Virus record (IMG/VR): IMGVR_UViG_3300024262_006558
Span: 62,001-126,000 of that record
Length of the DNA: 64,000 nt
Reading direction: 5' to 3' (one strand)
Shown: positions 4,494 through 63,608 of the stretch, piece after piece
Layout: every line of letters starts with the position of its first letter
Position numbering within the stretch: position 1 is the stretch's first letter
The notes under the pieces: generated by a model
What the model was told of the DNA's origin: nothing
What the model saw: the letters and a program-made list of their open reading frames with translations, nothing else
Database searches by the model: none
Position numbers and translations under genes: made by a program

Positions 4494-4549
4494 TACTAGT
4501 GTTTTTTATAAATATCAAAAACTTATTAAAATAAGCTTTTTATTATGCT

Positions 4550-6868: not shown

Positions 6869-6930
6869 TTATAAATTTTTTTTTATATAAATAGCTGTCA
6901 TTTTAAAGCAAGACAGCTGTATATAAAAAA

Positions 6931-7688: not shown

Positions 7689-7730
7689 TTTTGTATTATT
7701 TATTTTAAATATTATTCTTAAATATTATTT

Positions 7731-24397: not shown

Positions 24398-24508
24398 CTA
24401 ATTATTTTTACCCTCTTCTTGCTTTCGAACTTCATATCCACATTCTCTACTGCATGCAGGAGAAGTTTCTTTAGGTAGTGGATTGCCACAAATTGTACAT
24501 GTTCCCAT
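24398..24508 (-). CDS. 36-aa zinc-ribbon-like peptide
   Basis: Hand translation MGTCTICGNPLPKETSPACSRECGYEVRKQEEGKNN. Preceded by the TATTTAT motif. Confidence 0.5.
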   Translation of the reverse strand: MGTCTICGNPLPKETSPACSRECGYEVRKQEEGKNN

Positions 24509-24564
24509 GTTAATAAATAGACAAAAAAAGATTTGTAATGATCCCTTTTTAAATATTAATTACG

Positions 24565-24624
24565 ATAACAGAAAATAAAAGATAACTCTTCGAGTCGCTT
24601 AACGCTTATCTTTATTTTCGTGTT
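24565..24624 (-). repeat. Terminal hairpin site of array A, inverted copy of 60263..60322
   Basis: The reverse complement matches 60263..60322 at 59/60 nt. Confidence 0.95.
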
Positions 24625-24688
24625 GTATGCCATTAAAACGGTACGCTCGTACCTCGCCATACAACATGGTATATAAAACATACACTCA

Positions 24689-24847
24689 CTACCACTTTTC
24701 TTCTTTAAGAATTATAGGGTCAAAGGCGTAACCTAAATACGCCTTATACAGTTCAGGTCTTATCCAACCCCTATGTTTAGTTTTTAACCAAATTCCTTTT
24801 TTTATACGCCTTATTATGCGTATTTCATTCCATATACTTGTTATCAT
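24689..24847 (-). CDS. 52-aa basic, Trp-rich peptide encoded inside a hairpin loop
   Basis: Hand translation MITSIWNEIRIIRRIKKGIWLKTKHRGWIRPELYKAYLGYAFDPIILKEEKW. Flanked by arms gtatataaaacata / tacgtttcatatac. Confidence 0.6.
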   Translation of the reverse strand: MITSIWNEIRIIRRIKKGIWLKTKHRGWIRPELYKAYLGYAFDPIILKEEKW

Positions 24848-24890
24848 AATCCGTTCGTTTTACGTTTCATATACTTACCGTTGTAACACA

Positions 24891-25181
24891 TTAGCCAACT
24901 CTCGCTAAGTGCTTTCTAAAATCTTCGTTTTCCTTTTCCATAAATTCAGTAGCCTTTTGCATACATTCAATTAGGTTGTGGTTCTTGGTTTCTATTATTT
25001 CAGCAACTCCTTTCCATTGTCTTACTTCAGATGGGCTACCTTTGTCGCTTACATTTATGAAATAACCATCTTCATAGTCATACATAAAACAGATATTTCT
25101 TTCTTTTGCCAACGCTTCAAAACGTGTTACAACATTTTGTATAGTGCATGGCTTAATTTCGTTTTCTTTATTAGTGTTCAT
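24891..25181 (-). CDS. Cassette hypothetical protein (starts in loop, reads through the site)
   Basis: CTIQNVVTR is encoded by the hairpin arm and GTT. Confidence 0.65.
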   Translation of the reverse strand: MNTNKENEIKPCTIQNVVTRFEALAKERNICFMYDYEDGYFINVSDKGSPSEVRQWKGVAEIIETKNHNLIECMQKATEFMEKENEDFRKHLARVG

Positions 25182-25263
25182 CCTTATTTAAGTTTTTGGT
25201 CATTTATTTAATTAGCGGTTTCAAATCGCCACGACACCATACAAGATGCCGTTGTGTGTAATA

Positions 25264-25473
25264 CTAGCAACTACCATATCTGAAACTCCCAAATCCTTCA
25301 CCTTCGTATTCAGAATCAATAAAGAACCCTAATTTATCAAGTTCCTCAATATCATCCTTGCTCACTAATTCAGGGTCAATAGCTACATAAAAGTAGTCGT
25401 GTTCACAATGGCTTGGGTTTCTTGGGTTGCCATATTTTAAAAGTATTTGTAATGCTTTAATTAAATCTTCCAT
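25264..25473 (-). CDS. Cassette hypothetical protein
   Basis: MEDLIKALQILLKYGN...HCEHD. ATG at 25473. Confidence 0.7.
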   Translation of the reverse strand: MEDLIKALQILLKYGNPRNPSHCEHDYFYVAIDPELVSKDDIEELDKLGFFIDSEYEGEGFGSFRYGSC

Positions 25474-25612
25474 CTTTCTATTTAGTTTGTGGCTTAAATT
25501 CCGTACTACACACAACAATGTATATAGTTTATAAGCCTAATTAATATTATTTTTCAATTTGTAAATTTGTGCTATGGCTTACAAAACCATATACTCAACG
25601 TTATGCTTAACA

Positions 25613-25864
25613 CTATTGCATTAATTCTAACATAGCGTCTATACCATGTATTTGTTTAGTTGCTTTGAGTGTATCGTCTTCTTTGCTCTCTATATTTAAA
25701 GAGTAGCTTTTGCCATAACAAACTACTTTATCACTATGTATGTGGCAAAATCCAGCACTTATAGGTTCAAGGTGTTTAAAAGTCGAGTGTTCTATTGTTG
25801 TCGGGAAAATTATAATTTCGTCATATTCTCCTAATCTTACGTATTTCTGTTTTGTATCGTACAT
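25613..25864 (-). CDS. Cassette hypothetical protein
   Basis: KYV...IIIFP..IEHS...PISAGFC....CYGKSYSLNI pattern, typical of small phage proteins. Confidence 0.7.
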   Translation of the reverse strand: MYDTKQKYVRLGEYDEIIIFPTTIEHSTFKHLEPISAGFCHIHSDKVVCYGKSYSLNIESKEDDTLKATKQIHGIDAMLELMQ

Positions 25865-25960
25865 TTTCAATTTTAGTTTAGTGGTTTAACAATCCGTGAT
25901 AAGCATAACACAACCTATAAAGCCAAAAAAAAGGCTTATAGCTTTGTGCATTAGGCACAA

Positions 25961-26185
25961 TTAAGAAACGAACTCATTAAATTCATCTTCCTTAATTTCT
26001 CGTGCTTTACTATTCGTTACACCACCATACTTTTTAGATACCTTTAAAACCGCATCATCTTCATTTAATGCAAATGTGTAAGCACTCGAAGGTGTACAGT
26101 AAGGTCTTGATACCCTATAAAATTTAACTGTGCCTAACATTGTGTATAGCACATTGCTTTCGGTGTTTTTTGATACTGTATTCAT
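25961..26185 (-). CDS. Cassette hypothetical protein (reads through site)
   Basis: VLYTMLGTV is encoded by the arm and GTT. Confidence 0.6.
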   Translation of the reverse strand: MNTVSKNTESNVLYTMLGTVKFYRVSRPYCTPSSAYTFALNEDDAVLKVSKKYGGVTNSKAREIKEDEFNEFVS

Positions 26186-26257
26186 AGTTTTAAGTTTTTT
26201 ATTTTCAATTTAAGTTAGTGAGGCAACGCGCCATACACTCGTTCGTTATAGTGCATA

Positions 26258-26440
26258 TTATTGCTTTACTTCTTTACCACAATCAAAACACTCGTATTCT
26301 GTTTCGCTTATTGGTTTTTGCATACTTGGCTGCACACAATCGCAATAAAACGTACCCTTCGGCACAATAACATTATCTATATTTAATAGCTTGTTTTCTG
26401 CTTCCTTTTTACCTTCGTTGTACATTTGAAAATCATTCAT
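26258..26440 (-). CDS. Cassette Cys-rich small protein (reads through site)
   Basis: LNIDNVIVP crosses the site. Contains CxC...CxxC. Confidence 0.6.
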   Translation of the reverse strand: MNDFQMYNEGKKEAENKLLNIDNVIVPKGTFYCDCVQPSMQKPISETEYECFDCGKEVKQ

Positions 26441-26500
26441 AATTCATATTTTTAAGTTATTAATCGCTACTAAAACATAGACCTTACATTATATTTAATG

Positions 26501-26698
26501 CTACTTATGTAGTTCTAAACAACGGTATCTAAAATTATATTCATCGTACCAAAAACTTCTACAATTCCACATATTTATAGCATCCCCATAAACATTATTA
26601 TCAAACTTTAACCCTCTTTCTTCTGCTTGTTTGCAACTGTCTATCACTTTAAATCTGTGATAAAAGCATACAGTCATAAATCTTAATATTTTTTTCAT
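26501..26698 (-). CDS. Cassette hypothetical protein
   Basis: 65 aa, with NVYGDAIN..NCRS.W. Confidence 0.65.
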   Translation of the reverse strand: MKKILRFMTVCFYHRFKVIDSCKQAEERGLKFDNNVYGDAINMWNCRSFWYDEYNFRYRCLELHK

Positions 26699-26792
26699 TT
26701 TATCTATTTTGTTTTTAGTTAATTAACCGCACTAAAATATAACACGGTATAAAATGGCATTAAAACGCCATCTATACAACCGTTATATGCAA

Positions 26793-27101
26793 TTATAGTT
26801 TTAGTATTTGTTTAATGTCTGAATAACTAAACGTGCTACTTTTGAATTGATTCTTATCATTAGGGTTATACTTACCTATTTTATGACAATCTCTTTGTAT
26901 ATGATACAATAAATCACCAGTAGCGTACAGACTGCCATCTTTATTTATGCTGTAAACTACCCCTTCTTTTACCGTGTACAAATCTCTTCTTGCAACATAA
27001 TCTCTACCACAATAACACAAAGATATTTCCGCAAACAACCCACCTTCAAGCTCTCCACTTATTCTTAAATTTTCGGATAGTTCTTTTTCTATTAAATCCA
27101 T
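26793..27101 (-). CDS. Cassette hypothetical protein
   Basis: 102-aa ORF bounded by complementary ends. Confidence 0.65.
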   Translation of the reverse strand: MDLIEKELSENLRISGELEGGLFAEISLCYCGRDYVARRDLYTVKEGVVYSINKDGSLYATGDLLYHIQRDCHKIGKYNPNDKNQFKSSTFSYSDIKQILKL

Positions 27102-51056: not shown

Positions 51057-51058
51057 TT

Positions 51059-51970: not shown

Positions 51971-51971
51971 T

Positions 51972-53162
51972 ATGACACCCACCTGGAAAGATGTAATGAA
52001 ATTTGAATTGCCTGATAACCCTATTATTTTTGATATAGGAGGATTTAATGGAGACTGGACCCAAATAGCGTTAGATGAATATACTGCACCAACGATTTAT
52101 GTGTTTGAGCCTGTAAAGCAGTTTTATGAAAAAATCAAAAAAAGATACGCCGATAAAAAAAATGTTAAAGTATTTCATTTTGGATTATCTGACTCCACAA
52201 CATCTTTGGAAATTTCTGTATCTGGAGACGCCTCTTCTGTATTTAAGACAAATGGCGCCTCAGAAACTATACAGCTTAAAAGCATTGTTGAATTCATGAA
52301 GGAAGAGGGGGTTTACCATGTTGATCTTGCTAAGATCAACATAGAAGGGGAAGAATATAGACTCTTAGAGCACTTGGTAAAACTGCCTGAACTAAACATT
52401 TTTAACAATTTTTTAATACAATTTCATAAGTTTGTAGACAATTACGAAGAGAGAAGAAGGCTAATTCAAAAGGAGTTATCTAAATATTATGACATGCCTT
52501 TTAATTTTGAAATGATCTTTGAAGGATGGTCTAATAAAAAGGTTGAATTGATTAATTGTGTAGGAGATAGTCATGTTAGCAATTTTGCTAACACAGAAAA
52601 ATTGACTGATATGAAAGTGCCGTCTATCAATAATATGTTTAAAACTTATAGAGCTGGCCCGTACACTGCTTTTAATGTAAATCAAAAAAGCGATGTTAAA
52701 AACTATATAGAATCTATTAGCGATAAAGAGTCTTTACTTATTTGTTTTGGGGAAATAGACTGCAGAGCGCAAGTGAAAAAGGTAATGGAAAATACCAACA
52801 GGAAATATAGAGAAGTGATAGACGAAATTATAGATAACTATATAGATATAATTCAAAACTTTAAAGGTGACAATGTATATTTATGCTCAATAACCCCATG
52901 CATAGAGGATAAACCTCACTGGTACTACTATGAATCTCACCAGGAAGCCTTTGACTGCCCTAAAGGGACTAAGGAAGAAAGAAATTCATATAAAGAATAT
53001 TTTAATGAAAAATTAAAAAGTATATCTTCAAAAAAAGGATATAAATTCATTAGCATTTTTGACTATGTCAAAGATAGAAAAGATTTTTACCTAGATGATA
53101 TACATCTATCTCCAAAAAAAGTTAATTACTTAATAAGAAGGGAGGTACTAAAATTAGCATAA
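51972..53162 (+). CDS. FkbM-family methyltransferase fused to SGNH-hydrolase-like domain
   Basis: DIGGFNG, FEP, KINIEGEEY; then GDSH, FGEIDCR, DDIHL. Confidence 0.8.
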   Translation: MTPTWKDVMKFELPDNPIIFDIGGFNGDWTQIALDEYTAPTIYVFEPVKQFYEKIKKRYADKKNVKVFHFGLSDSTTSLEISVSGDASSVFKTNGASETIQLKSIVEFMKEEGVYHVDLAKINIEGEEYRLLEHLVKLPELNIFNNFLIQFHKFVDNYEERRRLIQKELSKYYDMPFNFEMIFEGWSNKKVELINCVGDSHVSNFANTEKLTDMKVPSINNMFKTYRAGPYTAFNVNQKSDVKNYIESISDKESLLICFGEIDCRAQVKKVMENTNRKYREVIDEIIDNYIDIIQNFKGDNVYLCSITPCIEDKPHWYYYESHQEAFDCPKGTKEERNSYKEYFNEKLKSISSKKGYKFISIFDYVKDRKDFYLDDIHLSPKKVNYLIRREVLKLA

Positions 53163-53959
53163 TGAAAGACATAATAGTAAAAAGTAATTGGGGCATGAAA
53201 GTTAATCTACAACATGAAAAACAAATATATCTTTTTGTTGATGATTTATCTGGAGCGAACACTCAAGTTGACGGTGTTAAGATTTTGTATTTATGTGAGC
53301 CAAATGAAATTTCAGGATTAGCTCAAAAAGCTATTTTAGAAAGCAGCAAATTTGATTACGTATTAACCCATGAATCAACAGTGTTAGACAGATGTAAAAA
53401 TGCTGTACTGTTTGAATTTGGAGGTTGTTGGATTCAAGGATATGAGTTCCCAGAAAAAGAGTTCTCAGTTTCAACAATCGTAGGTTTTAAGAAAATGGCT
53501 GAAGGTCATCTATTAAGACATAATTTATGGATTAGACAAGATGCTATAACTACTCCTAAAAAGTTCTTTATTAGCGGTAATGATCCTCACCACTTAAGGA
53601 TGCCAGCATTTGGAGAAAACCCAGTATTGGAAGGGGAAAAAACCCCATTGTTTGATAGCATGTTTCATATTGTTATTGAAAACTGTAAGAAAGACAATTG
53701 GTTTACAGAAAAGTTAATAGACACATTACAAACGAAGACATTACCTATTTACTGGGGATGCCCTAATATAGGTAACTGGTTCAATACTGACGGGATGATA
53801 ATAGTTAATAATGTTGACGATCTTATTGAGCAAGTAAATAAATTAACCCCAGAATTATATCAAGAAAAACTTTCTTTTATTGAAAGAAATTACGAAAAAT
53901 CCAAAGAGTTTATTAACTTAAGTGATAGGGTTGCAGATAAATTAAAAGAGATTTTATAA
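53162..53959 (+). CDS. GT10 (alpha-1,3-fucosyltransferase-like) protein
   Basis: FHIVIEN....WFTEKL.D......PIYWG.PNI. Confidence 0.75.
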   Translation: MKDIIVKSNWGMKVNLQHEKQIYLFVDDLSGANTQVDGVKILYLCEPNEISGLAQKAILESSKFDYVLTHESTVLDRCKNAVLFEFGGCWIQGYEFPEKEFSVSTIVGFKKMAEGHLLRHNLWIRQDAITTPKKFFISGNDPHHLRMPAFGENPVLEGEKTPLFDSMFHIVIENCKKDNWFTEKLIDTLQTKTLPIYWGCPNIGNWFNTDGMIIVNNVDDLIEQVNKLTPELYQEKLSFIERNYEKSKEFINLSDRVADKLKEIL

Positions 53960-54032
53960 TGAGGGTCATAGGAAACTATTTTTTCACCATTCTAGAAAAA
54001 GGGGAAGTTTGAAACTTTAAAATATATTGAAA

Positions 54033-54824
54033 ATGTATAAAAATATTGTCACATCTCAACTTGCTGGAGGCCTTGGCAACTATTTATTTCAAATAGCTGC
54101 AGCATACTCTTATGCTCTAAAGCATGGCAAAAAGCCAGTTTTTAACACTAATTTATCCATAAAAGTTCACAGGGGAATAGAATGTTATTTTGACAACATA
54201 CTTCGATCGATAGAGAAGAAAGATACGGTAGCAACTCAGACCACAATTGGTGAACAAGGATTTCAATTTACAGAATTGCCTTTTGTTGCAAATGGAGTAG
54301 CTTTAACTGGATATTTTCAATCTGAAAAATACTTTAAGGAATACGAAAAAGAGATTAAAGATCTCTTTTCCTGCCCTGATCACATAAAAGAATCTATAAA
54401 CAAAAGATTCCCTAGTATGGATAGTGTGGAATCATGTTCTATACATGTCCGCAGAGGTGACTATGTAAAACTGCAAGATATACACCCAGTTCAGAGCATG
54501 CCTTACTTTATGAAAGCTTTAAATAAGATGCCAAAAGATTGTAGCATATTTGTTTTTTCTGATGATATAGAGTGGTGTAAAAATTCTTTCCCAGATATGG
54601 GGGAAAGAATTCATTTCGTAGAAGGATATTCCGATGTAGAAGATTTGTATTTAATGTCAATGTGTGATCATAACATTATTTCAAATAGCACTTTTTCATG
54701 GTGGGCTGCCTGGTTAAATGATAATCCTAAAAAAATAGTAGTGGCTCCAAAGAAATGGTTTGGGCCAATGAACTCTCATTTAGATACAAAGGATATTTAT
54801 CCAGAAAAATGGGAGAAAATATAA
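54033..54824 (+). CDS. GT11 alpha-1,2-fucosyl/colitosyl-transferase
   Basis: GGLGNYLFQ, GYFQSEKYF, HVRRGDY, FSDDI.WC, NSTFSWW.AWL. Confidence 0.92.
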   Translation: MYKNIVTSQLAGGLGNYLFQIAAAYSYALKHGKKPVFNTNLSIKVHRGIECYFDNILRSIEKKDTVATQTTIGEQGFQFTELPFVANGVALTGYFQSEKYFKEYEKEIKDLFSCPDHIKESINKRFPSMDSVESCSIHVRRGDYVKLQDIHPVQSMPYFMKALNKMPKDCSIFVFSDDIEWCKNSFPDMGERIHFVEGYSDVEDLYLMSMCDHNIISNSTFSWWAAWLNDNPKKIVVAPKKWFGPMNSHLDTKDIYPEKWEKI

Positions 54825-54967
54825 TGATTTAGGTAGTGATATTAATCTGAATCACTTTTGAATTTTGAAGGACCTAAAATGAGGAAAATGTTAAACGATA
54901 AAGGTAGTAAATGATTATCTAGATAATCATTTAATAAATAGAATTAAACGTATTTATAAAAAAGATT

Positions 54968-55348
54968 GTGAAATTTATGAGAAAACTCTTCTACGTAAAT
55001 AATAGTGGATATAAAACGTCTCTTAATCAAACTCTCAGGCAAGCTGAAGAATCTGCCACAATTAATTACATAAGGGAGAAGTGCAGCGTTTTTATAGCTC
55101 AAATGATTGAATTAAATATAGAGTCGACATTTGGCCCAATGGAATTGCATAACTTTAATATAAGGTGTAGCAAATTTTTTAAGACTATTAATGTCCATGA
55201 TTTTGGTGTAGTATATGATGAGTCTATTTGGATGCCTCAAGACATACCAAGAAATATGTTAAGGGTAACAGTTCAATTAAGCAGTTATTTACATGCATAT
55301 GAGATGGACTTCTCTATATCTAATATTAAGAAAAAATACAATTTATGA
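54968..55348 (+). CDS. Hypothetical protein resembling the tail sheath C-terminal domain
   Basis: NQTLRQ...F.VVYDE......IPRNML...VQL parallels sheath GQKTLQR...FNVVMDD......IDRNTL...IQL. Confidence 0.45.
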   Translation: MKFMRKLFYVNNSGYKTSLNQTLRQAEESATINYIREKCSVFIAQMIELNIESTFGPMELHNFNIRCSKFFKTINVHDFGVVYDESIWMPQDIPRNMLRVTVQLSSYLHAYEMDFSISNIKKKYNL

Positions 55349-56277
55349 AAAGTAAAAGACCGACTAATACAATAATAGTAACTGGAGGCTCTGGGTTACT
55401 TGGAAAACATTTACGAGAAATATGGGATAATGATCACGTAATTTATATTTCATCTAAAGACTTTGATCTCACAAACGAGCAATCGGTTAGAACAATGTTT
55501 AAATTTTACCAACCAAAAGTTGTAGTTCATCTAGCGGCTCAAGTTGGAGGTATTATGGATAATTCTAAACATCCAGTTAAATACCTTAACAATAACATAA
55601 AGATGGATGCTAATGTGTTAAAGTGGGCTGAAGATTTCGGAGTCGAAAAAGTAATAGGCATGCTTAGTACATGTATATATCCTGATAATCTAAATGAAGA
55701 TCAATATCCTATGAAAGAGGAAGTGCTTCATGATGGACCTCCAGCTATAACAAATTTCTCATACGGATACGCCAAGCGATGCATGGCAGTTCAAATGGAG
55801 GCGTACAATAAAGAGTTTGGAACCAATTTTCAATGGATTGCTCCATGCAATCTTTATGGGGAGCATGATAATTTTGATCACGAACAAAAAGCTCACTTTA
55901 TTACAGCTTTAATCAAAAAGATTGATACTGCAGTAAAAAATGGAGATGATAATATTCAACTGTTCGGAACTGGGTCTCCATTGCGTCAATTTATGCATGC
56001 TGGAGATTTAGCTAAAATTATCATAGATTGTGTCGAAAATGATTATAATTTAAATATGAATGTTGCAGTCCCTTGGAATTACTCAATTAAGGATATGGCT
56101 GAAATAGCTCTTAAAGCTTGCGGGGCTGAGCATCTAAAGATAGAATTTGACCCATCTAAGCCAGATGGTCAATATAGAAAAGATGCATCAACTGAAAGGT
56201 TTAAAAAAACCTTCCCCGACTTTCAGTTTACCTCACTTGAAGAAGGTATAAAAAAGGTTTATCAAGCATTGCAATAA
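55345..56277 (+). CDS. fcl: GDP-L-fucose synthase / ColC-type epimerase-reductase
   Basis: TGGSGLLG, HLAA.VGGI, STCIYP, YGYAKR, PCNLYG, GTG.PLRQF, KPDG. Confidence 0.9.
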   Translation: MKSKRPTNTIIVTGGSGLLGKHLREIWDNDHVIYISSKDFDLTNEQSVRTMFKFYQPKVVVHLAAQVGGIMDNSKHPVKYLNNNIKMDANVLKWAEDFGVEKVIGMLSTCIYPDNLNEDQYPMKEEVLHDGPPAITNFSYGYAKRCMAVQMEAYNKEFGTNFQWIAPCNLYGEHDNFDHEQKAHFITALIKKIDTAVKNGDDNIQLFGTGSPLRQFMHAGDLAKIIIDCVENDYNLNMNVAVPWNYSIKDMAEIALKACGAEHLKIEFDPSKPDGQYRKDASTERFKKTFPDFQFTSLEEGIKKVYQALQ

Positions 56278-56389: not shown

Positions 56390-56701
56390 ATGAAGCTTAT
56401 AAATCTAAAACAAGTATCTGATCATAAAGTTAACAAATGGCTTGAGGATAATATAGCTGAACTAACCGCATACCAAAAAGAGCGCATTAGAAATGATGAG
56501 ATGGTAAGATGGGCTCCTTTTAAATTCTATGAACGTAGGAAGAAGGTTGACAGTATATGGATTAGGATATCTGCTTTGTTTATACCTTTAGCGTGGACCG
56601 TGCTAGTTATTGGGCTGCCTTTCGACTTTCTCATTACTGGAACTTGGGGATATAATAAGATAGACTGGTTTAGCAACTGGAGCAGCGCTTGTGGGTTTTA
56701 A
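56390..56701 (+). CDS. Hypothetical membrane protein at the head of array B
   Basis: 103 aa with a hydrophobic segment; the stop codon overlaps the first site. Confidence 0.65.
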   Translation: MKLINLKQVSDHKVNKWLEDNIAELTAYQKERIRNDEMVRWAPFKFYERRKKVDSIWIRISALFIPLAWTVLVIGLPFDFLITGTWGYNKIDWFSNWSSACGF

Positions 56702-56738
56702 TGTTAAGTATATGAGTAGGATTTTAAACGATTAAGTA

Positions 56739-56876
56739 ATGAGCAGTAAAAAGCACGATAAATTAAACAACGCAGAAGTTATAAAGGTGTTAGAAGAAAT
56801 AACAACGGAAGAGAAGTTAGCAATGTTTGGAATAACTAAACCAAGTACAGATGATAAAGATAAGCCGAAAAAGTAA
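56739..56876 (+). CDS. 45-aa peptide inside a hairpin loop
   Basis: MSSKKHDKLNNAEVIKVLEEITTEEKLAMFGITKPSTDDKDKPKK, between arms 56708-56729 and 56877-56898. Confidence 0.5.
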   Translation: MSSKKHDKLNNAEVIKVLEEITTEEKLAMFGITKPSTDDKDKPKK

Positions 56877-57051
56877 GTTTAAAATATTACGCATATACCT
56901 TGTTGTGAAGCGTTTTATGGGCGAGATGTTTACTTTTGAGTGCCACCATAAAAAATGCGATGGTAGGTGCTCTTACTTAGGTGATGATAGGCAGACAGGA
57001 GTTTGGATTAGCTTATATGAATGCAATAAGTGCGGAACTGAATGGATGTAA
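56851..57051 (+). CDS. Cassette Cys-rich protein (reads through site)
   Basis: ILRIYLVVKR is encoded by the arm and GTT; C-terminal CxxC. Confidence 0.55.
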   Translation: MIKISRKSKFKILRIYLVVKRFMGEMFTFECHHKKCDGRCSYLGDDRQTGVWISLYECNKCGTEWM

Positions 57052-57073
57052 TGCTTTACAATAATATATATAT

Positions 57074-57382
57074 ATGACATTTGAAGAAATAGAAACAAAC
57101 CCTGATCTTTCAAACAATTCAGAGCAGGAATATGTTAGACTTAAAAAAAGAAACGTAATGATCAGAAAGTCATTCTACCATAGCTACAATAAATCGGTCT
57201 GCGAGTATGATGTAAACGGTCATCCTACCAAATGCGAATGTGGATGCGAGGATTTCGATCAAGATATCATAGAAATGGTCGAAGGTCATATTCATGAATA
57301 TGACCTTACATGCTCAAATGAAGGCTGTAGAAAAATAGTTGGATACTGGTCTTATGGATCTTGGCAGTCTTTAGAATTGTAA
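57074..57382 (+). CDS. Hypothetical Zn-binding protein
   Basis: CECG...C...C...GYWSYG.W. Confidence 0.65.
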   Translation: MTFEEIETNPDLSNNSEQEYVRLKKRNVMIRKSFYHSYNKSVCEYDVNGHPTKCECGCEDFDQDIIEMVEGHIHEYDLTCSNEGCRKIVGYWSYGSWQSLEL

Positions 57383-57395
57383 TAAAACACATATA

Positions 57396-57635
57396 ATGAA
57401 AAAATTTATAGACATAGAATTGCCTAAAAATTTTATGAACGTATCTATTACCGATAACAACGAATTAGTAGCGGATAACAATAGTAGTTCGGAATGGGAT
57501 ACTTTAAAATTCCCATTGCCAAAAAGGGTGTGGGGAGTGTATAGCTATGAAGCTACCGTAGATAATCAAAACGCTAAATCTATTGCTAGACTAGTTGATT
57601 GTCGAGGTTGGATAAGAAGGTTCTTAGAGGTTTAA
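57396..57635 (+). CDS. Hypothetical protein
   Basis: 79-aa ORF. Confidence 0.6.
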   Translation: MKKFIDIELPKNFMNVSITDNNELVADNNSSSEWDTLKFPLPKRVWGVYSYEATVDNQNAKSIARLVDCRGWIRRFLEV

Positions 57636-57645
57636 TTATAGAATT

Positions 57646-57825
57646 ATGGATATAAAAGAAATAAAAAAAGAAGAGGTAAGTGAAATATATGACTTTTTAG
57701 AGGGGCTGCAAGATTACGGACACATTTACCACTACCCGCCCGAAAATCTTGACGAACCTTTCAAAAAGATAATGGAAGGAATTGAAGAGGTGCAGGGATT
57801 GATGAAAGATAGCTTTGGGATGTAA
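57646..57825 (+). CDS. 59-aa hypothetical protein
   Basis: Hand translation MDIKEIKKEEVSEIYDFLEG...KDSFGM. Confidence 0.55.
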   Translation: MDIKEIKKEEVSEIYDFLEGLQDYGHIYHYPPENLDEPFKKIMEGIEEVQGLMKDSFGM

Positions 57826-58183
57826 TCTTATTTACATGCTGTTAATAAAACTAGGGCAACGTTTAACGTTTTCTAGTAGATTATAATATGCACTCTACCA
57901 TGTGCCCGACATCGGCAACATGGTTTTATGTTGAATTAAATAGGGGTGGGATTAAATGAACGTCTGCACTAGTCGAGTTGAAAATATACTTGCAAGTTGG
58001 TACTAAAGCCAACTATCCTAGCCAACGGGCTTTGCGGTTCACCCTATTTAATGTAACGCTTTGTGTATGGTTAGTAAACCCTTGCACAGACTTTCAAAAT
58101 TAGTATAAACCTTGGTGGGTTTATTACCTACAATGTTAAATGTATGCTTTGCTAGAGATTACGGACAGATAACCACTAAAACA

Positions 58184-58489
58184 ATGGACTTAAAAAAGAG
58201 AATAGAAGAAATTACACAAAACGGAACGCTTGAAAGCGGTGAACAAATAACCTATGTAGATACCGATGACCTTTACTTGTTGCTGAATGAAGTAAACTCT
58301 AGTGAAGTCATACATCTTGTTAGCGATTGGAATGATTGGGTATATGGATCACCTACATCAATAATAGATGGGAGTCATATTGAAGTTATGTGGTCTGACA
58401 ACTCAGTCACTAAAGTTTTTTATGAATGGAGAAGTAAATCTATGGCACATAAGTTACCACCAATAAAGTGGAGGTATTCTAATAGCTAA
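58184..58489 (+). CDS. Cassette hypothetical protein (first 45 codons lie within the hairpin)
   Basis: MDLKKRIEE...SSEVIHLVSDW. GTT at 58319; the TAA overlaps the closing TAAC. Confidence 0.65.
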   Translation: MDLKKRIEEITQNGTLESGEQITYVDTDDLYLLLNEVNSSEVIHLVSDWNDWVYGSPTSIIDGSHIEVMWSDNSVTKVFYEWRSKSMAHKLPPIKWRYSNS

Positions 58490-58581
58490 CGGTTTGGCTA
58501 TGTGCTGAACGTAGAGCAACGGAGTTTTGCATATAGCTAGTGTTATATGCTTTTAATTATTAACAACTAAAGATTATAAAA

Positions 58582-58932
58582 ATGAGTGAAACAGTACATT
58601 ACAGAGGGATTGCTACTAAAATTGAGCAACCAAACGACAAGACATTAATTGATGTCGCAAAAAGTATTTTAACAGAACGTAACAAAGAAATAGCCGACTA
58701 TTATGACAATGTAATAGAGTGTTTGTGTGATAGCTATTATAGAGAATTTTTCTACCATTCAAAAACACAGACCCTTTACAAATTAGACAATAATGAATAC
58801 GAGCCTGATGAAGATATAATAAGAGCAGAACCGAAAGAAAACGGGACTATTGAATATGAGTTAAGATATTATAACGGTGGTGCTGGATTTGATGAATGTA
58901 TGGAAGAGGCTTTTGATAAGCTCGATGCTTAA
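58582..58932 (+). CDS. Cassette hypothetical protein
   Basis: MSETVHYRG...YYNGGAGFDE; bounded by gttatatgc/gcatataac. Confidence 0.75.
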   Translation: MSETVHYRGIATKIEQPNDKTLIDVAKSILTERNKEIADYYDNVIECLCDSYYREFFYHSKTQTLYKLDNNEYEPDEDIIRAEPKENGTIEYELRYYNGGAGFDECMEEAFDKLDA

Positions 58933-59036
58933 TTGCATATAACGGCATCCTGTATGATGTCGTGAAACGAAGTGGAATGCATTCATACACCGTGTTGTGT
59001 GTAGTGCGGATTATTAACTGATAACAAAATTAAAAG

Positions 59037-59216
59037 ATGAATGTATTTGATGAATTTTTAATGGAATCTGAAAAGGAACAATTAAAAGACAACCGACTGA
59101 AAGAACAGAAAGATAAAAAAGACTACTCGTATGAACACGATGGTAGAATAGAAACATGTGACGATTGTAGAACACCTATAAACTCACACGGACACTGCCC
59201 TAGATGCGATTACTAG
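59037..59216 (+). CDS. 59-aa cassette protein with CxxC...CxxC zinc finger
   Basis: Hand translation ends TCDDCRTPINSHGHCPRCDY. Confidence 0.65.
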   Translation: MNVFDEFLMESEKEQLKDNRLKEQKDKKDYSYEHDGRIETCDDCRTPINSHGHCPRCDY

Positions 59217-59267
59217 CATTACACACAACGGATGGTAATATGAATAGTGCGGATTAAAAACATAAAA

Positions 59268-59435
59268 ATGGCAAAGACACGAGAACAAAAAAGAATTGAA
59301 AGTGCGGATAAAGTTTGTAGAGAACTTAGATACCAAATAGTTAAATATGGATTGATAGGTGATTGGGACGCATTAAATAAGCACTTTAATTCTTGGATGA
59401 ATAACGCTAAGAAATCTAAATACGACAGACCCTAG
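59268..59435 (+). CDS. 55-aa protein inside a hairpin loop
   Basis: MAKTREQKR..., between arms gtaatatgaatagtgc and gcattatttatattac. Confidence 0.6.
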   Translation: MAKTREQKRIESADKVCRELRYQIVKYGLIGDWDALNKHFNSWMNNAKKSKYDRP

Positions 59436-59514
59436 CATTATTTATATTACGTGTTGTGCGCACGTTTTAATTGCGACACAACGCTAAGTATAACAAACGG
59501 AAAATTTACGACTT

Positions 59515-59673
59515 ATGAGATTTGAATTAATGCAATGGAAATGGTATAGGAAGTGGAAAGGTGGCTCTTATTACCTTATATGGAATTGGCTACCTATGAA
59601 CACTTTTTGGAGCGACAAACTTATTACAAGCTGTGGAGGCAGAGCCATTAAAGAGGAACACTACCCTAAGTAA
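59515..59673 (+). CDS. 52-aa Trp-rich peptide inside a hairpin loop
   Basis: MRFELMQWKWYRKWKGGSYYLIWNWLPMNTFWSDKLITSCGGRAIKEEHYPK. Confidence 0.6.
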   Translation: MRFELMQWKWYRKWKGGSYYLIWNWLPMNTFWSDKLITSCGGRAIKEEHYPK

Positions 59674-59791
59674 ATTTTATGTTTTGTTATACAATGTTGT
59701 ATGGCAAAGCGTACCGTTTTAATGGCATACAACGGTTGAGTATAAACGTAGTGTTTAACTGAACTTAATTTGAAACACAAAACTTAAAATT

Positions 59792-59992
59792 ATGATAAAA
59801 AGATTGATTGAAAAACTGAAAACATTACGTTTATACTTTGTTAGAAAACGTTGTTTTGAGGTGTATTTCACAGATACCAAAAGTGGAAAGGAAGGAAGAA
59901 TTAATTTATGGGTGAAAGATGTCGATGAAGTAGAACCTTACTTTGAAAAACACTTTCCACATTTGGAATTATATGATATAGGAGAATGTTGA
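59792..59992 (+). CDS. Cassette hypothetical protein (reads through site)
   Basis: TLRLYFVRKR is encoded by the arm and the GTT at 59840. Confidence 0.65.
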   Translation: MIKRLIEKLKTLRLYFVRKRCFEVYFTDTKSGKEGRINLWVKDVDEVEPYFEKHFPHLELYDIGEC

Positions 59993-60102
59993 TTACAATG
60001 TTTTCTAACGACCTGTGTAAAATTTCGTGTGAGGCACGAGCAATGAATTTTAAACCTTGTTAGCGTTTCGTTTTTGAGCGTTGGCATTTAAAAACTAAAA
60101 AG

Positions 60103-60264
60103 ATGAAAGTAAGTATTCAGTTCACAAAAGAAGAATTAAGATTATTAAAAAAGGCGTTATTTTTTGGAATAACACATAATGAAAACAACCAAGAAGCAAA
60201 TAAAATGAATGAATTAGATGCGAAAATGAATTTACTGTGTGCGTTGGCAGAAAATGAACGCTAA
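60103..60264 (+). CDS. 53-aa cassette protein
   Basis: MKVSIQFTKEELRLLKKALFFG...; the TAA overlaps the TAAC of the terminal site. Confidence 0.6.
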   Translation: MKVSIQFTKEELRLLKKALFFGITHNENNQEANKMNELDAKMNLLCALAENER

Positions 60265-60322
60265 CACGAAAATAAAGATAAGCGTTAAGCGACTCAAAGA
60301 GTTATCTTTTATTTTCTGTTAT
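60263..60322 (+). repeat. Terminal hairpin site of array B, inverted copy of 24565..24624
   Basis: aacacgaaaataaagataagcgttaagcgactcaaagagttatcttttattttctgttat. Confidence 0.95.
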
Positions 60323-60394
60323 AACGCGCTTTTAGCTACATAATTTTTATTGATTATATTCAAAAATTTGTTTATGTTTTGAATAAAATCATAA

Positions 60395-61594
60395 ATGACG
60401 GAAGTAAAGATACCCTTAGTAAAAGACACTATATCACATGAGGATATGGATGCTCTTGCGGATTGGATTAAAACCTACCCTCGCCTTACGAAAGGCCCAG
60501 AAACAAATGAATTTGAAAAAGAGTGGTCTGAATGGCTAGGTACAAAGTATTCCGTATTTTGTAACTCTGGATCTTCAGCAAACCTTCTTATGCTTTACGC
60601 TCTTATCGTAGCGAAAAGACTTAACAATAAAAAAATAGTGGTACCAGCATTAGCTTGGGCTACGGATCTTGCTCCAGTAATGCAATTGGGTCTTGAGCCA
60701 ATTATATGCGATTGTAATGGTCAAAATCTCGCTGTAGACCTAAATGATTTAGAACGTATTTTCCAGAAAGACAACCCTTCAGCCCTTATGCTGGTATCGG
60801 TTCTTGGTATCCCTCCAAATATGGATGAGATAATTGTTCTTTGTAAAAAGTATGGAGTTATCCTTTTAGAGGATGCTTGTGAATCACTAGGTTCTGAATA
60901 CAAAGGCAATAAACTCGGAACTTTCGGATCCATGTCAACATTCTCACTATATTTCGGACACCATCTTTCAACTATTGAAGGTGGTATGGTATGCACTGAT
61001 GATGAAGAGCTTTATGAAATATTGAAATCTATTCGTTCTCATGGTTGGGACAGAGATGCTTCAGAAGAGTATCGTAAAAAGTGGAGAGATAAATGGGATG
61101 TGGATGATTTTAACGGCCTTTACACTTTCTACCACCCTGGATTCAATTTAAGAGCTACAGATTTACAAGCATTTATAGGTAGAAGGCAAATTAAAAAAGC
61201 TGATGAAGTTTCTAAAATCAGAGCTGCTAATTTTCAGAAATATCAAGAATTGATATCCGATCATTCTGCATGGAAACCTGAACCGCCAGAAGGCGCTTTT
61301 GTTTCCAATTTTTGTTACCCTGTACTGCACGCAAAGAGAAAAGAGATAGTAACAGATCTAATCGCTAATGGCGTTGAAACTAGACCTATGATATGTGGAT
61401 CTATGAGTACTCAACCATTTTATGTGGACAAATACGGCAGAAAAGAATTATACACCGCAAAGCAAATAGATGATTACGGATTCTACGTGCCTAATAATGA
61501 TAAAATGACTGATGAGGACATTCAAACCGTATGCAACATAATCAATAAGCATACTGTAAACCCTGAAGTAGAACCGCAAGAAAACAATCAATAA
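60395..61594 (+). CDS. DegT/DnrJ-fold PLP enzyme, ColD-like GDP-4-keto-6-deoxymannose 3-dehydratase
   Basis: [29 protein letters not shown] (His at the usual Lys position), RSHGW. Confidence 0.8.
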
Positions 61595-61595
61595 A

Positions 61596-63608
61596 ATGAA
61601 AGAAGATAAAAAGAAAGCTCTCATTATAGGTATCACTGGAATGGATGGGTCTCACTTGTCTGAATTACTTTTAGATAAAGGATATGAAGTTCACGGGGTT
61701 ATTAGAAGACATTCTCATATAGGGGGAACTGGACGAATTGATCACATATTCGATGAATTGAAACTTCATTATGGAGACGTTACTGACGCTTTAAATATAT
61801 CTAGGTTAATTTCCGAAATACAACCCGATGAAATTTACAACCTATCAGCTCAGAGCCATGTAAAAGTTTCTTTTGAAGAACCTGGATATACAGCTCAAGT
61901 AGATGCAATTGGAACATTAAACGTAATGGAATCAGCTAGAATCCATTGTCCTAATGCGAAGATTTACCAAGCATCAACCTCTGAGATGTTTGGAGGTTTA
62001 GCTTACAATAGACCTGAAAATGGTTATACTGAAGAATCTCCATTTCACCCGCGATCACCTTATGGTGTCGCTAAGGTGTACGGTTTTTGGATAGTAAAAA
62101 ACTATAGAGAAGCATACAATATGCATGCTTCCAACGGTATATTATTCAATCATGAAGGTGAAAGACGTGGAGTAACTTTTGTTACTAGAAAAGTGACCAG
62201 AGCATTGGCGGCCATTAAGAAGGGTGAGCAAGATGTTTTGACTCTCGGTAACATGGATTCCTTAAGAGACTGGGGATATGCTAAAGAGTATTGTATAAAT
62301 TTAGATGTACCTATTTTGACAACTAGTGGATGGAAATTTTATGATGAAATTTCTGAAGGTGATCAAATAATTAATTTTAATTCTGAAGAAAATCACATAA
62401 CTACAGATACAGTTAAAAGCAAAATAGTAATTAAATCAAATGGTGAAAAAATTAAATTAACAGGCAGAGGAGTTTGTATAAACGTAACTCCAGATCATCG
62501 GATTTACTATCAGAAAAAAAGTAAAAAATCAAAAGGTGGATGGTCAAAATACAAAATTTGTACAGCTAAAGAATTTTATGATTTATTAAAAAATAAAGCG
62601 TACAGAACAAAGTATGACTATAGGCTGCCGCATTTTCAAGATTATGACAAAAAAGAAAATGAAAAATACTCAGATAACGAACTTTATTTAATAGGGGCTT
62701 TATTGGCGGAAGGTTGTCTATCTAATTCAAATCCTGGGAGAGGGTCTATAGTTTCCTTATCTCAATCTTTTATTAAAAATGAAAAAATTCACAAAAAATT
62801 ACAAAAAATAATAGATGATGAAAAACTTGAAGCTAGGTTATGCAATAAAAACAATGGTGTAACTGAATGGGTCTTTACAGCAGATAGTTCTAAAAAAATT
62901 ATTGAATATTTTGATGGATTTGATGTGCATGTGATGCCTAAAGATTTCTATAATTTAAGCAGTAGGCAATGTAAAATTGTATTTGACTCTTTAATGGATT
63001 GCGATGGATGTTGGGGATCATACACATACACTTCTAAACGTAATTTACTAGCATCTGATTTCCAAACTATAGCTCATCTTGCAGGATATAGAACTACGGG
63101 CGTAAAATTTGTAAATAACGTTTACATAACTAGTGTTATAACACGATCCAAAAAACATATGTATATACAAAATGTGGAATCATATAATGATAACAATGAT
63201 AAAGTTTGGTGTGTGAATAGCAATAATGGAACTATCATAACTAGAGATCAAAACTGCATTAATATAGTAGGTAATTGTGAAGGAATGTGGAGAATGTTGC
63301 AACAAGACACTCCTGATGACTATGTACTGGCAACTAACGAAACTCATACAGTAAGACAATTTGTAGAAGAAGCAGTTAGGTATTGCGGATGGGATATCGA
63401 GTGGAGAGGTGAGGGCGTAGATGAAAAAGGTTATGATAAGTCAACTGGTAAACTTCTCATCGAAATTAACCCTAAATATTATAGACCATCTGAAGTTGAT
63501 CTATTGTTAGGGGACGCTACCAAAGCAAAGGAGAAGATGGGTTGGGAACCTAAAACTAAATTTAAAGATCTAGTCAAATTAATGATGGAGCATGATCTGA
63601 AAGCTTAA
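61596..63608 (+). CDS. gmd: GDP-mannose 4,6-dehydratase interrupted by an intein
   Basis: GITG.DGS.L, AQSHV..SF, QASTSE, PRSPYG.AK, LFNHE..RRG.TFVTRK, RDWG.A; resumes after the insert with WRMLQQD.PDDYV. Confidence 0.95.
62292..63275 (+). mobile_element. Intein with LAGLIDADG homing endonuclease (328 aa)
   Basis: Starts [12 protein letters not shown]; block B VTPDH; LIGALLAEG and FDSLMDCDG; ends VWCV...NG....R.....IVGN followed by Cys+1. Confidence 0.92.

What the first reader, a model, noticed from the sequence alone, without database searches (positions are those of the whole stretch)
59227..59698. Whole genes nested inside the loops of the recombination-site hairpins
Seen: arms gtaatatgaatagtgc (59235) and gcattatttatattac (59435) enclose a complete 55-aa ORF. 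Arms gtataacaaacggaaaatttac and gtaaattttatgttttgttatac enclose a 52-aa ORF (59515-59673). The same holds for 56739-56876 and 24689-24847. These sites are about 200-230 nt long, versus about 45-95 nt for the gene-less ones. Established: canonical attC variable loops are short and non-coding. Inference: there are two cargo positions per unit (between sites and within sites), an inside-out cassette design.
Basis: partly seen in the sequence, partly recalled or inferred. Interest (0 to 1): 0.87.

Follow-up and report, generated by a model that had tools for sequence, protein, structure and literature searches.

The report
Genes inside cassette-site hairpin loops
In the integron-like gene-cassette arrays of this large marine phage, some small genes sit inside the long hairpin that normally only separates cassettes, and the usual gene compartment shrinks to a tiny conserved hairpin; this mirror-image cassette layout recurs in dozens of other phages and some host genomes and I found no description of it.

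Summary
All four arm pairs exist at the stated coordinates and each encloses a complete small ORF.

- **Genes and pairing.** The loop ORFs are under purifying selection (pN/pS 0.09-0.40). The arms show compensatory changes between phages.
- **Setting.** The window is part of a 388-kb T4-like phage with two integron-like cassette arrays. Their sites read xxxxAAC, 4-6 nt, arm, loop, arm', 2-3 nt, GTTxxxx. Each site's 3' box complements the next site's 5' box.
- **Main finding.** Three of the four gene-in-loop sites are followed at once by a 30-44-nt hairpin, "H" (GTTGT-NNNN-TCGTTTTAATG-N'N'N'N'-ACAAC). H is the usual gene compartment collapsed. I found 48 distinct gene-in-loop sites next to H in other phage contigs (124-723 nt). 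One more lies in a Formosa chromosome and one in Polaribacter phage P12002L.
- **Strand.** Non-Watson-Crick arm positions are G·T, not A·C (133:36), so one strand is selected to fold.
- **Recombinase.** Arrays of this build lie directly upstream of a short Xer-like tyrosine recombinase that lacks the IntI-specific insert. None is in the window.
- **Known limits.** A site of this family was the only phage site that IntI1 failed to recombine in published assays.

The two-compartment "inside-out" reading holds. Recombination itself is untested.

The parts
59223..59459 (+). Long hairpin site 4. 5' box ACACAAC (59223-59229), spacer GGATG, arm 59235-59250, loop holding ORF j (59268-59435, 55 aa), arm 59435-59450, spacer GT, 3' box GTTGTGC (59453-59459).
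   Evidence: The ORF j module recurs in L004-L007 at 93% aa identity with pN/pS 0.09-0.11. There is a paired one-base deletion in both arms in L006/L007.
59453..59482 (+). H hairpin 1, the collapsed gene compartment: GTTGTGCGC-ACGTTTTAATT-GCGACACAAC.
   Evidence: It belongs to the H family found in at least 118 IMG/VR stretches and 37 bacterial contigs.
59476..59702 (+). Long hairpin site 5. 5' box ACACAAC, spacer GCTAA, arm 59488-59509, loop holding ORF k (59515-59673, 52 aa), arm 59670-59692, spacer AAT, 3' box GTTGTAT (59696-59702).
   Evidence: ORF k relatives occur in L010-L015 at 41-86% aa identity; pN/pS 0.14-0.40 was computed for four of them (L010, L011, L012, L014). These relatives mostly lack arms.
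59696..59733 (+). H hairpin 2: GTTGTATGGC..CGTACCGTTTTAAT-GGCATACAAC.
   Evidence: A near-identical copy lies in the - array at 24622-24665.
56702..56908 (+). Long hairpin site 1, the first element of the + array. Arms 56708-56729 and 56877-56898, loop holding ORF b (56739-56876, 45 aa), 3' box GTTGTGA (56902-56908). The 5' box is degenerate (TGTTAAG).
   Evidence: The next compartment (56902-57062) is not empty. It holds the 41-44-aa zinc-ribbon-like ORF c between CGTTTT and TAATG.
24659..24887 (-). Long hairpin site G-. 5' box GTTACAAC (24880-24887), spacer GGTAA, arm 24861-24874, loop holding the 52-aa ORF 24689-24847, arm 24669-24682, spacer CAT, 3' box GTTGTAT (24659-24665).
   Evidence: The relative in L017 keeps the arms, with a C-G to A-T double change. 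pN/pS is 0.30-0.33.
24622..24665 (-). H hairpin that follows site G- in the - array.
59727..59846 (+). Intermediate site 6 (ATACAAC ... GTTAGAA). Arms 59739-59756 and 59820-59837. The 63-nt loop holds the ATG of ORF l (59792-59992), which reads through the 3' arm and 3' box.
   Evidence: It is 95.6% identical, from AAC to GTTAG, to uncultured 462-kb phage LR756500, and the flanks differ. There the same 17-codon leader is fused in frame to an unrelated ORF.
58484..59000 (+). Ordinary units. Short site 2 (58484-58548), ORF h (58582-58932), short site 3 (58937-59000). The 3' box of each site complements the 5' box of the next (GTTATAT/ATATAAC, GTTGTGT/ACACAAC).
60003..60324 (+). Short site 7 (60003-60065), ORF m (60103-60264) and short site 8 (60259-60324), which ends the + array.
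   Evidence: Site 7 plus 24 nt is 98.6% identical to Maribacter phage Panino. The site 8 hairpin recurs at 24565-24621 in the - array with a different 5' box.
24398..27101 (-). The whole - strand array. It holds short sites (26737-26789, 24565-24621), a 97-nt site (25510-25606), start-codon-bearing sites (26132-26251, 25127-25257), the gene-in-loop site and H.

Best explanation
**What it is.** The two arrays are integron-like cassette arrays carried by a T4-like jumbo phage of marine Flavobacteriia.

**The recombination structure.** It is a single-stranded DNA hairpin. An outer stem is made by the conserved boxes xxxxAAC and GTTxxxx. Next comes an asymmetric unpaired spacer, 4-6 nt on one side and 2-3 nt on the other. 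Then comes an inner stem, the 'arms'.

**Two loops.** In a circular cassette this stem-spacer-stem rod has a loop at each end.
- In ordinary units the gene is in the loop beyond the outer stem, the 'between sites' position, and the loop beyond the inner stem is short.
- In the four cases flagged, the gene is in the loop beyond the inner stem.
- The other loop is then usually reduced to about 8-11 nt, TCGTTTTAATG, giving hairpin H.
- The rod a recombinase would read is the same in both layouts. Only the side carrying the gene differs.

**Shown.**
- The anatomy and the chaining of boxes between successive sites.
- The regular pairing of gene-in-loop sites with H.
- Covariation of the arms.
- Selection for folding on one strand.
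- Reality of the loop genes.
- Spread of the design across many phages and some Bacteroidota genomes.
- Tight linkage of such arrays to a short Xer-like tyrosine recombinase elsewhere.

**Inferred.**
- That this recombinase, supplied by the host or from outside the window, cuts at the AAC/GTT boxes.
- That both layouts are mobilised.
- That long loops fold during phage replication, when single-stranded DNA is plentiful.
For: **Anatomy and chaining.**. Every 3' box complements the next 5' box: GTTATAT/ATATAAC, GTTGTGT/ACACAAC, GTTGTGC(GC)/(GCG)ACACAAC, GTTGTAT/ATACAAC, GTTAGAA/TTCTAAC, GTTAGCG/CGCTAAC.

**H family.**
- At least 118 IMG/VR stretches matched the pattern, and 91 of the matches pair at the first two or more variable stem positions.
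- 37 bacterial contigs matched, mostly Bacteroidota.

**Gene-in-loop sites next to H.**
- 52 of 78 H contexts have such a site directly upstream, and 49 of the 52 hold an ATG ORF of 46-125 aa.
- A stricter pass gives 48 distinct arm pairs, 124-723 nt long.

**Arm pairing.**
- Own-arm pairing is 0.97 against 0.51 for arms of different sites.
- There is a paired deletion in the ORF j arms.
- There is a C-G to A-T double change in the G- arms.

**One-strand selection.** G·T to A·C is 112:3. With a scoring that treats both alike it is 133:36, p = 3e-14.

**Loop genes are real.** pN/pS is 0.09-0.40.

**Same build in a host chromosome.** Formosa sp. A9 has an array that includes a gene-in-loop site followed by H.

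**Recombinase linkage.**
- Xer-like genes lie beside arrays in Gillisia, Polaribacter and Bacteroidales contigs.
- In IMG/VR loci, 141 distinct strong sites lie within 5 kb upstream of the recombinase gene against 2 downstream.
- One such contig has a phage-type helicase next door.

**Which boxes are conserved.** The AAC/GTT triplets are near-invariant. The first bases of the arms vary (GTA, GTG, GTT, GCA, GGC). That fits outer boxes as the cut site.
Against: - No tyrosine recombinase was found among the about 30 larger window ORFs tested with Pfam. The rest of the 388-kb contig was not seen.
- The linked recombinase lacks the roughly 40-aa insert that defines IntI.
- P12002L_attC1, a short site of this family, was the only one of six phage sites not recombined by IntI1.
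- The arms are AT-rich, and a 14-22-bp stem closing a 150-190-nt loop is thermodynamically weak. The fold is absent from the minimum-energy structure of 24659-24886.
- Modules assort on both sides of the hairpin. Site 6, site 8 and the ORF j module each have different neighbours in different genomes. A single crossover point does not explain that.
- The folding strand is the ORF-sense strand. An RNA-level role is therefore not excluded for the phage arrays.
Confidence: 0.55

Rival explanations
1. Register shift. The small H hairpin with its flanks (..ATAC, 3 nt, GTTGT..ACAAC, 5 nt, GTAT..) is the real recombination site of these units. The long arms are then simply the complementary ends of an ordinary cassette. 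Nothing is 'inside' a site. The array switches between two mirror-image site types.
For: - H is short, strongly conserved and covarying, so it would fold far more easily than a 200-nt loop.
- Read this way, the site has the same short/long spacer asymmetry as the ordinary sites, mirrored.
- The unit of homology between phages is exactly arm-ORF-arm.
- The arm framework GTATATGAATAGTGC / GCATTATTTATATAC is shared by many sites that hold different ORFs.
Against: - In this register the near-invariant AAC/GTT triplets would sit in the inner, uncut position. The variable arm ends (GTA, GTG, GCA, GGC) would be the cut site. That is the reverse of what conservation suggests.
- In the window, consecutive modules have unrelated arms (59435-59450 against 59488-59509), so the outer stem of an H-centred site would be only about 4-5 bp.
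Confidence: 0.25
2. RNA-level or regulatory hairpins. The stems flank each ORF in the polycistronic transcript, acting in processing, protection or termination. Genes are shuffled by homologous recombination at conserved linkers, as proposed for the PeSL motifs of T4-type phages.
For: - The phage is T4-like (gp23, prohead protease and sheath).
- The arrays sit like hyperplastic regions between core genes.
- Folding is favoured on the ORF-sense strand, with G·T meaning G·U.
- Conserved linkers enclose swapped ORFs.
- PeSL-mediated shuffling is documented in PMC2839356 and PMC4122927.
Against: - This reading does not explain the invariant AAC/GTT boxes, the complementarity between successive sites, or the asymmetric spacers.
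- It does not explain the 141:2 placement next to a tyrosine recombinase gene.
- In the Formosa and Gillisia arrays most ORFs lie on the opposite strand, yet the sites keep the same polarity and the same G·T side (read by eye, not counted).
Confidence: 0.12
3. Chance inverted repeats around small ORFs, or small transposable elements with terminal inverted repeats inserted into short sites.
For: - A loose inverted-repeat scan has a high background in this AT-rich DNA (66 hits against 39-50 shuffled).
- Relatives of ORF k and of the 24689-24847 ORF exist without arms in other phages.
Against: - The strict architecture is about 8-fold enriched.
- 48 independent examples have site-specific covarying arms.
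- Compensatory changes are seen.
- The arms differ from site to site, and no transposase is present.
Confidence: 0.03

Closest known systems
Integron gene cassettes and attC sites, including clusters of attC sites lacking an integrase (CALINs) in virulent phages (Qi et al. 2023, PMC9892861)
   Same: - Arrays of mostly co-oriented small genes separated by imperfect hairpins.
- The hairpins have outer boxes ending AAC and beginning GTT, inner paired boxes, an unpaired central spacer and a variable loop.
- The 3' box of one site complements the 5' box of the next, which is the signature of a crossover at the box.
- One strand is favoured for folding.
- There is no integrase in the phage window.
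   Different: - The gene can sit in the variable loop, with the normal cargo position collapsed to hairpin H.
- The linked recombinase is a roughly 270-375-aa Xer-like enzyme without the IntI insert.
- In the IMG/VR loci the array is upstream of that gene, and in L198 (the one checked) its ORFs are co-oriented with it.
- The ORF-sense strand folds better.
- The spacer is asymmetric, 4-6 against 2-3 nt.
- One family member was not a substrate of IntI1.
- The integron review I read mentions only a short ORF within attC (PMC8876359).
PeSL (promoter-early stem-loop) mobile regulatory cassettes of T4-type phages (PMC2839356, PMC4122927)
   Same: - T4-like phage.
- Small ORFs of unknown function in plastic regions, bracketed by repeated hairpin-containing motifs.
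- The same linker is found around different genes in related phages.
   Different: - PeSLs are a conserved promoter plus a terminator-like stem-loop, thought to act through homologous recombination.
- Here the arms are site-specific and covarying.
- Here the boxes chain between sites, and the arrays associate with a tyrosine recombinase.
pdif (Xer-dependent) modules of Acinetobacter plasmids
   Same: - A Xer-type recombinase context.
- Modules bounded by inversely oriented sites, so that two alternating kinds of compartment both carry genes.
   Different: - pdif sites are 28-bp duplex sites of fixed sequence.
- They show no module-specific paired arms, no single-strand bias and no hairpin geometry.

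Membership tests
Integron attC site / cassette array | Outer boxes R'' (RYYYAAC) and R' (GTTRRRY) that pair, with a conserved AAC/GTT triplet. | tested here: met
   Boxes ACACAAC/GTTGTGC, ATACAAC/GTTAGAA and others are seen. Exceptions are the degenerate 5' box at 56702 and AAT variants at 26495 and 25955.
Integron attC site / cassette array | The 3' box of one site is complementary to the 5' box of the next site, meaning a crossover inside the box. | tested here: met
   Six consecutive junctions in the + array and most junctions in the - array. The same holds in L006 and L017.
Integron attC site / cassette array | Inner paired boxes, an unpaired central spacer and extrahelical bases, with a short non-coding variable loop. 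| tested here: not met
   Inner arms and an unpaired spacer are present, and H carries a bulged T. However, the spacer is asymmetric (4-6 against 2-3 nt). The loop is 150-190 nt and coding in four window sites, and sites reach 723 nt overall elsewhere.
Integron attC site / cassette array | Score above threshold with the published attC covariance model (IntegronFinder) or HattCI. | not testable with these tools
   Neither model is available here, and Rfam reported no match in the window. HattCI did call P12002L_attC1, a short member of this family.
Integron attC site / cassette array | Recombined by an integron integrase at G|TT as a folded bottom strand. | tested here: inconclusive
In the published assay, P12002L_attC1 (TGCTAAC..TCGTTTTAATG..GTTAGGC) was the one phage site that gave no verified junction with IntI1. 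Here the ORF-sense strand is the one selected to fold.
Integron (platform) | An IntI tyrosine recombinase with the IntI-specific additional domain, next to the array. | tested here: not met
   - No tyrosine recombinase was found among the about 30 larger window ORFs tested.
- The recombinases beside arrays of this build score below the TIGR02249 cut-off (207 against 265 bits).
- They have 18 residues where VchIntIA has 61.
- The L198 enzyme is only 270 aa.
PeSL cassettes of T4-type phages | A repeated, sequence-conserved early-promoter-plus-stem-loop motif flanking the ORFs. | tested here: inconclusive
   Conserved linkers do exist (TAGTGCGGATTA upstream of ORFs, and CGTTTTAAT loops). The stems, however, are site-specific (own pairing 0.97 against cross 0.51). 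Promoter function was not tested.

The most novel reading that the evidence does not exclude
This is a distinct cassette system of Bacteroidota and their phages. It is run by a short Xer-like recombinase rather than IntI.

Its basic unit is a 'blank' dumbbell of two hairpins that carry the same TCGTTTTAATG loop: H plus a minimal 46-60-nt site. A gene can be installed in either loop. That would make ordinary and inside-out cassettes two outcomes of one gene-capture process.

Hints:
- 11 of 76 H copies are followed by a minimal hairpin with the same loop.
- In several ordinary units the cargo lies between CGTTTT and TAATG, as if the loop had been split (56902-57062 and 25133-24880).
Probability: 0.3. 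Interest if true: 0.9.

Novelty: new variant of a known kind. Interest (0 to 1): 0.8.

Why it matters
**For integron biology.** The recombination hairpin is treated as a short non-coding tail of the cassette. Here the same rod-like structure carries the gene on its other side, and it does so repeatedly and under selection.
- The structure rather than the position of the cargo would define a cassette.

**For phage biology.** The finding exposes a large, apparently undescribed pool of exchangeable small genes.
- The pool is shared between unrelated marine Flavobacteriia phages, from a 77-kb phage to 388-462-kb jumbo phages, and host chromosomes.
- It is linked to a Xer-like recombinase.
- Cargo in related arrays includes DNA methyltransferases and a CdiI immunity protein.

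**For the origin of cassettes.** How cassettes are born is an open question. Blank units and two loading positions make it testable.

Tried and rejected
- A free-energy scan of all AAC..GTT pairs and a loose arm scan were too unspecific, at 66 hits against 39-50 shuffled. I replaced them with an architecture-constrained scan.
- Rfam and tRNA scans of the window found nothing.
- PHROGs matched none of the four loop ORFs or five neighbouring cassette ORFs, apart from ORF h to an unknown-function family, and Pfam matched none of the nine it was given.
- Pfam on about 30 larger window ORFs found no tyrosine recombinase, only a GIY-YIG homing endonuclease.
- Literature searches for a description of this system returned nothing specific. 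The searches covered integron-like arrays in Flavobacteriia or Bacteroidota, ORFs within attC, and phage attC.
- I first read the G·T bias as showing bottom-strand folding, because most ORFs in Formosa and Gillisia lie on the other strand. I dropped that reading when the one recombinase-linked array I checked for gene strand (L198) proved to have its ORFs on the folding strand, as do the phage arrays here.
- MITE or IS insertion was rejected. The arms differ from site to site and no transposase is present.

Full report
**1. What the window is.**

The window is 34% G+C. It encodes:
- a T4-type major capsid protein, a prohead protease, a tail sheath and a tail tube;
- PhoH and a GIY-YIG homing endonuclease;
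- a block of sugar-modification genes.

The closest sheath relatives are only about 31% identical. They include uncultured huge phages, a Microcystis phage and Flavobacterium phages. The sequence is positions 62001-126000 of the 388,594-bp contig IMGVR_UViG_3300024262_006558.

Two runs of small co-oriented ORFs interrupt the core genes. One is on the + strand at about 56700-60330. The other is on the - strand at about 24400-27100.

**2. The observation.**

Coordinates are given in the parts list.

The sites share one architecture: a 5' box ending AAC, 4-6 unpaired bases (often GGNNN), an arm usually starting GTAT, a loop, the complementary arm ending ATAC, 2-3 unpaired bases, and a 3' box starting GTT.

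Statistics:
- A scan for this architecture gives 46 hits against 6 in shuffled sequence.
- Looser scans do not discriminate in this AT-rich DNA.
- With DNA energy parameters the end-to-end pairing appears in the minimum-energy fold of three of the four sites.
- The stems are weak relative to loops of 150-190 nt.

**3. The arrays are chains.**

The 3' box of each site is the reverse complement of the 5' box of the next site. This holds for six junctions in a row on the + strand and for most on the - strand. It is the footprint expected if units enter and leave by a crossover inside the box, as in integrons.

The array can therefore be written as alternating modules:
- X modules end GTTxxxx ... 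xxxxAAC.
- Y modules end GTAT.. ... ..ATAC.
- Each module is bounded by its own inverted repeat, and each either holds a gene or is a bare hairpin.

The + array, listed from site 2 onward, reads: Y(short) X(ORF h), Y(short) X(ORF i), Y(ORF j) X(empty), Y(ORF k) X(empty), Y(start codon only) X(ORF l), Y(short) X(ORF m), Y(short). Upstream lie the 56702 unit and a run of ORFs with no recognisable sites (57074-58489).

With a crossover at AAC, each of these units has exactly one gene, in one of two positions. One window unit, 56702-57062, has a small ORF in both positions.

**4. The empty X module is a conserved element.**

The empty X module, which I call H, reads GTTGT-NNNN-(T)C-GTTTTAAT-G-N'N'N'N'-ACAAC.
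- A pattern search found at least 118 stretches in IMG/VR.
- Most have a covarying inner stem, such as AAAA/TTTT, AGCA/TGCT, GCTT/AAGC and AGTG/CACT.
- H is nearly always preceded by a stop codon plus the right arm of a gene-bearing Y module, and often followed by GGNNN-GTAT.

Searching upstream of H recovered 48 distinct long sites of 124-723 nt. The design flagged in this window is therefore common, not a local oddity.

Other occurrences:
- The cultured Polaribacter phage P12002L has a site at 39512-39713 around gp57.
- The Formosa sp. A9 chromosome has one gene-in-loop site followed by H.

**5. Pairing is selected, and on one strand.**

- Arms pair with their own partner at 97% of positions. 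They pair with the partners of other sites at 51%.
- In L006/L007 the ORF j module has lost one base from each arm at matching positions.
- In L017 the relative of the 24689-24847 module has changed a C-G pair to A-T.
- Non-Watson-Crick positions are G·T far more often than A·C. The ratio is 112:3 with my first scoring and 133:36 with a scoring blind to the difference, p = 3e-14.

Only the strand that carries the phage ORFs therefore keeps a good hairpin. Duplex-level conservation, or complementarity by descent, would give no such bias.

**6. The loop ORFs are genes.**

- ORF j relatives are 93% identical, with pN/pS about 0.1.
- ORF k relatives are 41-86% identical; pN/pS, computed for four of them, is 0.14-0.40.
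- Relatives of the 24689-24847 ORF are 60-77% identical, with pN/pS about 0.3.
- None of them matches Pfam or PHROGs.
- Relatives of ORF k, and one relative of the 24689-24847 ORF, occur in other phages without any arms. The genes exist independently of the hairpin frame.
- The frame GTATATGAATAGTGC / GCATTATTTATATAC is shared by many sites that hold different genes.

**7. What reads the sites.**

None of the roughly 30 larger window ORFs that I tested with Pfam is a tyrosine recombinase.

In bacterial contigs that carry H, a Xer-like tyrosine recombinase lies beside small arrays of the same build. Examples are Gillisia L148, Polaribacter L160 and Bacteroidales L150.

The enzyme:
- It passes the NCBIfam model named 'site-specific tyrosine recombinase/integron integrase' (236 against 220 bits), but fails the integron-integrase model (207 against 265 bits).
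- Aligned to Vibrio IntIA, it has 18 residues where IntIA has 61. It therefore lacks the insert that defines IntI.

Eighty IMG/VR loci encode relatives at 38-47% identity. In those with full flanks:
- 141 distinct strong sites lie within 5 kb upstream of the gene and 2 lie downstream.
- Site lengths peak at 80-100 nt and 115-135 nt.
- A few long sites hold genes, and at least two are followed by H.

One such contig has a 270-aa recombinase followed by a phage-type helicase. Some phages therefore seem to carry the whole platform.

**8. Relation to published work.**

Qi et al. 2023 reported clusters of attC sites in virulent phages, P12002L among them.

Their primer table shows that P12002L_attC1 is TGCTAAC GGCTAC GGCTAAACGG TCGTTTTAATG CCGTTTTAGCC ATT GTTAGGC. 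This is a minimal site of exactly this family. It was the only one of six phage sites that gave no verified recombination with IntI1. That fits a system read by a different recombinase.

IntegronFinder 2.0 reports almost no complete integrons in Bacteroidetes. The integron review I read mentions only a short ORF inside attC. My searches found no description of H, of gene-bearing loops or of this recombinase-array pairing.

**9. Mechanism, and what remains open.**

I favour the inside-out model. The recombinase reads a rod made of outer stem, spacer and inner stem. A circular unit has a loop at each end of that rod, and the gene can occupy either loop.

Points in favour:
- The outer AAC/GTT triplets are the invariant part.
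- The gene-less sites, the host chromosomal sites and the gene-bearing sites all share one geometry.

Points against, or unresolved:
- The long-range stems are weak.
- The hairpins and the modules between them have different partners in different genomes on both sides, so exchange is not limited to one crossover point.
- The mirrored register centred on H would need only short hairpins.
- An RNA-level role cannot be excluded for the phage arrays, because the folding strand is the coding strand. However, it does not account for the boxes, the chaining or the recombinase linkage.

**10. Verdict.**

Calling the hairpins integron attC sites in the strict sense is not justified.

This looks like a new variant of the integron principle. 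Its enzyme may be a different one.

Noticed in passing
window 59727-59992; 26132-26251 (-); 25127-25257 (-); L002 4001-4256: Three intermediate-length sites carry a 5' leader and an ATG in their loop, and the ORF reads through the 3' arm and 3' box into the next compartment. In phage LR756500 the same hairpin supplies the same 17 codons (MIKRLIEKLKTLRLYFV) in frame to an unrelated ORF. This could be a site-borne translation start, or it could be chance.
   Followed up: partly
window 56902-57062; 25133-24880 (-); 59840-60009; 60059-60265: In several ordinary units the cargo lies between CGTTTT (just after the 3' box stem) and TAATG or AATG (just before the closing stem). It looks as if the gene had been inserted into the TCGTTTTAATG loop of an H hairpin. 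The TAA often serves as the stop codon.
   Followed up: no
window 58999-59017, 59242-59260; L001 3264-3285 and 3700-3722; L002 5033-5052: A conserved motif, (A/T)TAGTRCGGATTAWWAAC, lies between the 5' arm and the start codon of many cassette ORFs in unrelated phages. Its core ATTAAAAC resembles the reverse complement of the H loop. Its function is unknown.
   Followed up: no
window 60266-60322 and 24565-24621: The same 57-nt hairpin (ACGAAAATAAAGATAA..TTATCTTTTATTTTCTGTTAT) ends the + array and is the last hairpin of the - array. The 5' boxes differ, and the sequence after GTTAT differs.
   Followed up: partly
window 57827-58185: This is a stretch of about 350 nt without an ATG-initiated ORF inside the + array (only TTG-start ORFs are listed). 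It has its own inverted repeat (57930-57945 / 58042-58057). It has no Rfam match and remains unexplained.
   Followed up: no
window 49230-49874: A free-standing GIY-YIG homing endonuclease with NUMOD1 and NUMOD3 motifs sits at the start of the sugar-gene block.
   Followed up: no
window 49852-56277 and 60395-63608: The phage carries a polysaccharide or sugar-nucleotide gene set: family 2 and family 11 glycosyltransferases, an NAD-dependent epimerase, a DegT-type aminotransferase and a 670-aa GDP-mannose dehydratase-like protein. The + cassette array is inserted in the middle of it.
   Followed up: no
window 18931-19196 and 20949-21214: The same sequence motifs recur in the adjacent ORFs 18833-20821 and 20851-21927, and similar ones recur at 3227-3583. 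This suggests repeated paralogous segments in the long - strand genes.
   Followed up: no
L139 (Formosa sp. A9 chromosome NZ_CP195158) 3300-8000: This is a chromosomal array of near-identical sites of about 125 nt and the same build. Its cassettes are mostly on the opposite strand and include a CdiI immunity protein. An IS21-type element lies at one end. No recombinase lies within the 8 kb seen.
   Followed up: partly
L255 (Polaribacter phage P12002L) 31100-41000, - strand: At least nine sites of this family lie among methyltransferase genes and small ORFs. They include gene-in-loop and start-in-loop forms. No integrase is annotated in the genome.
   Followed up: partly
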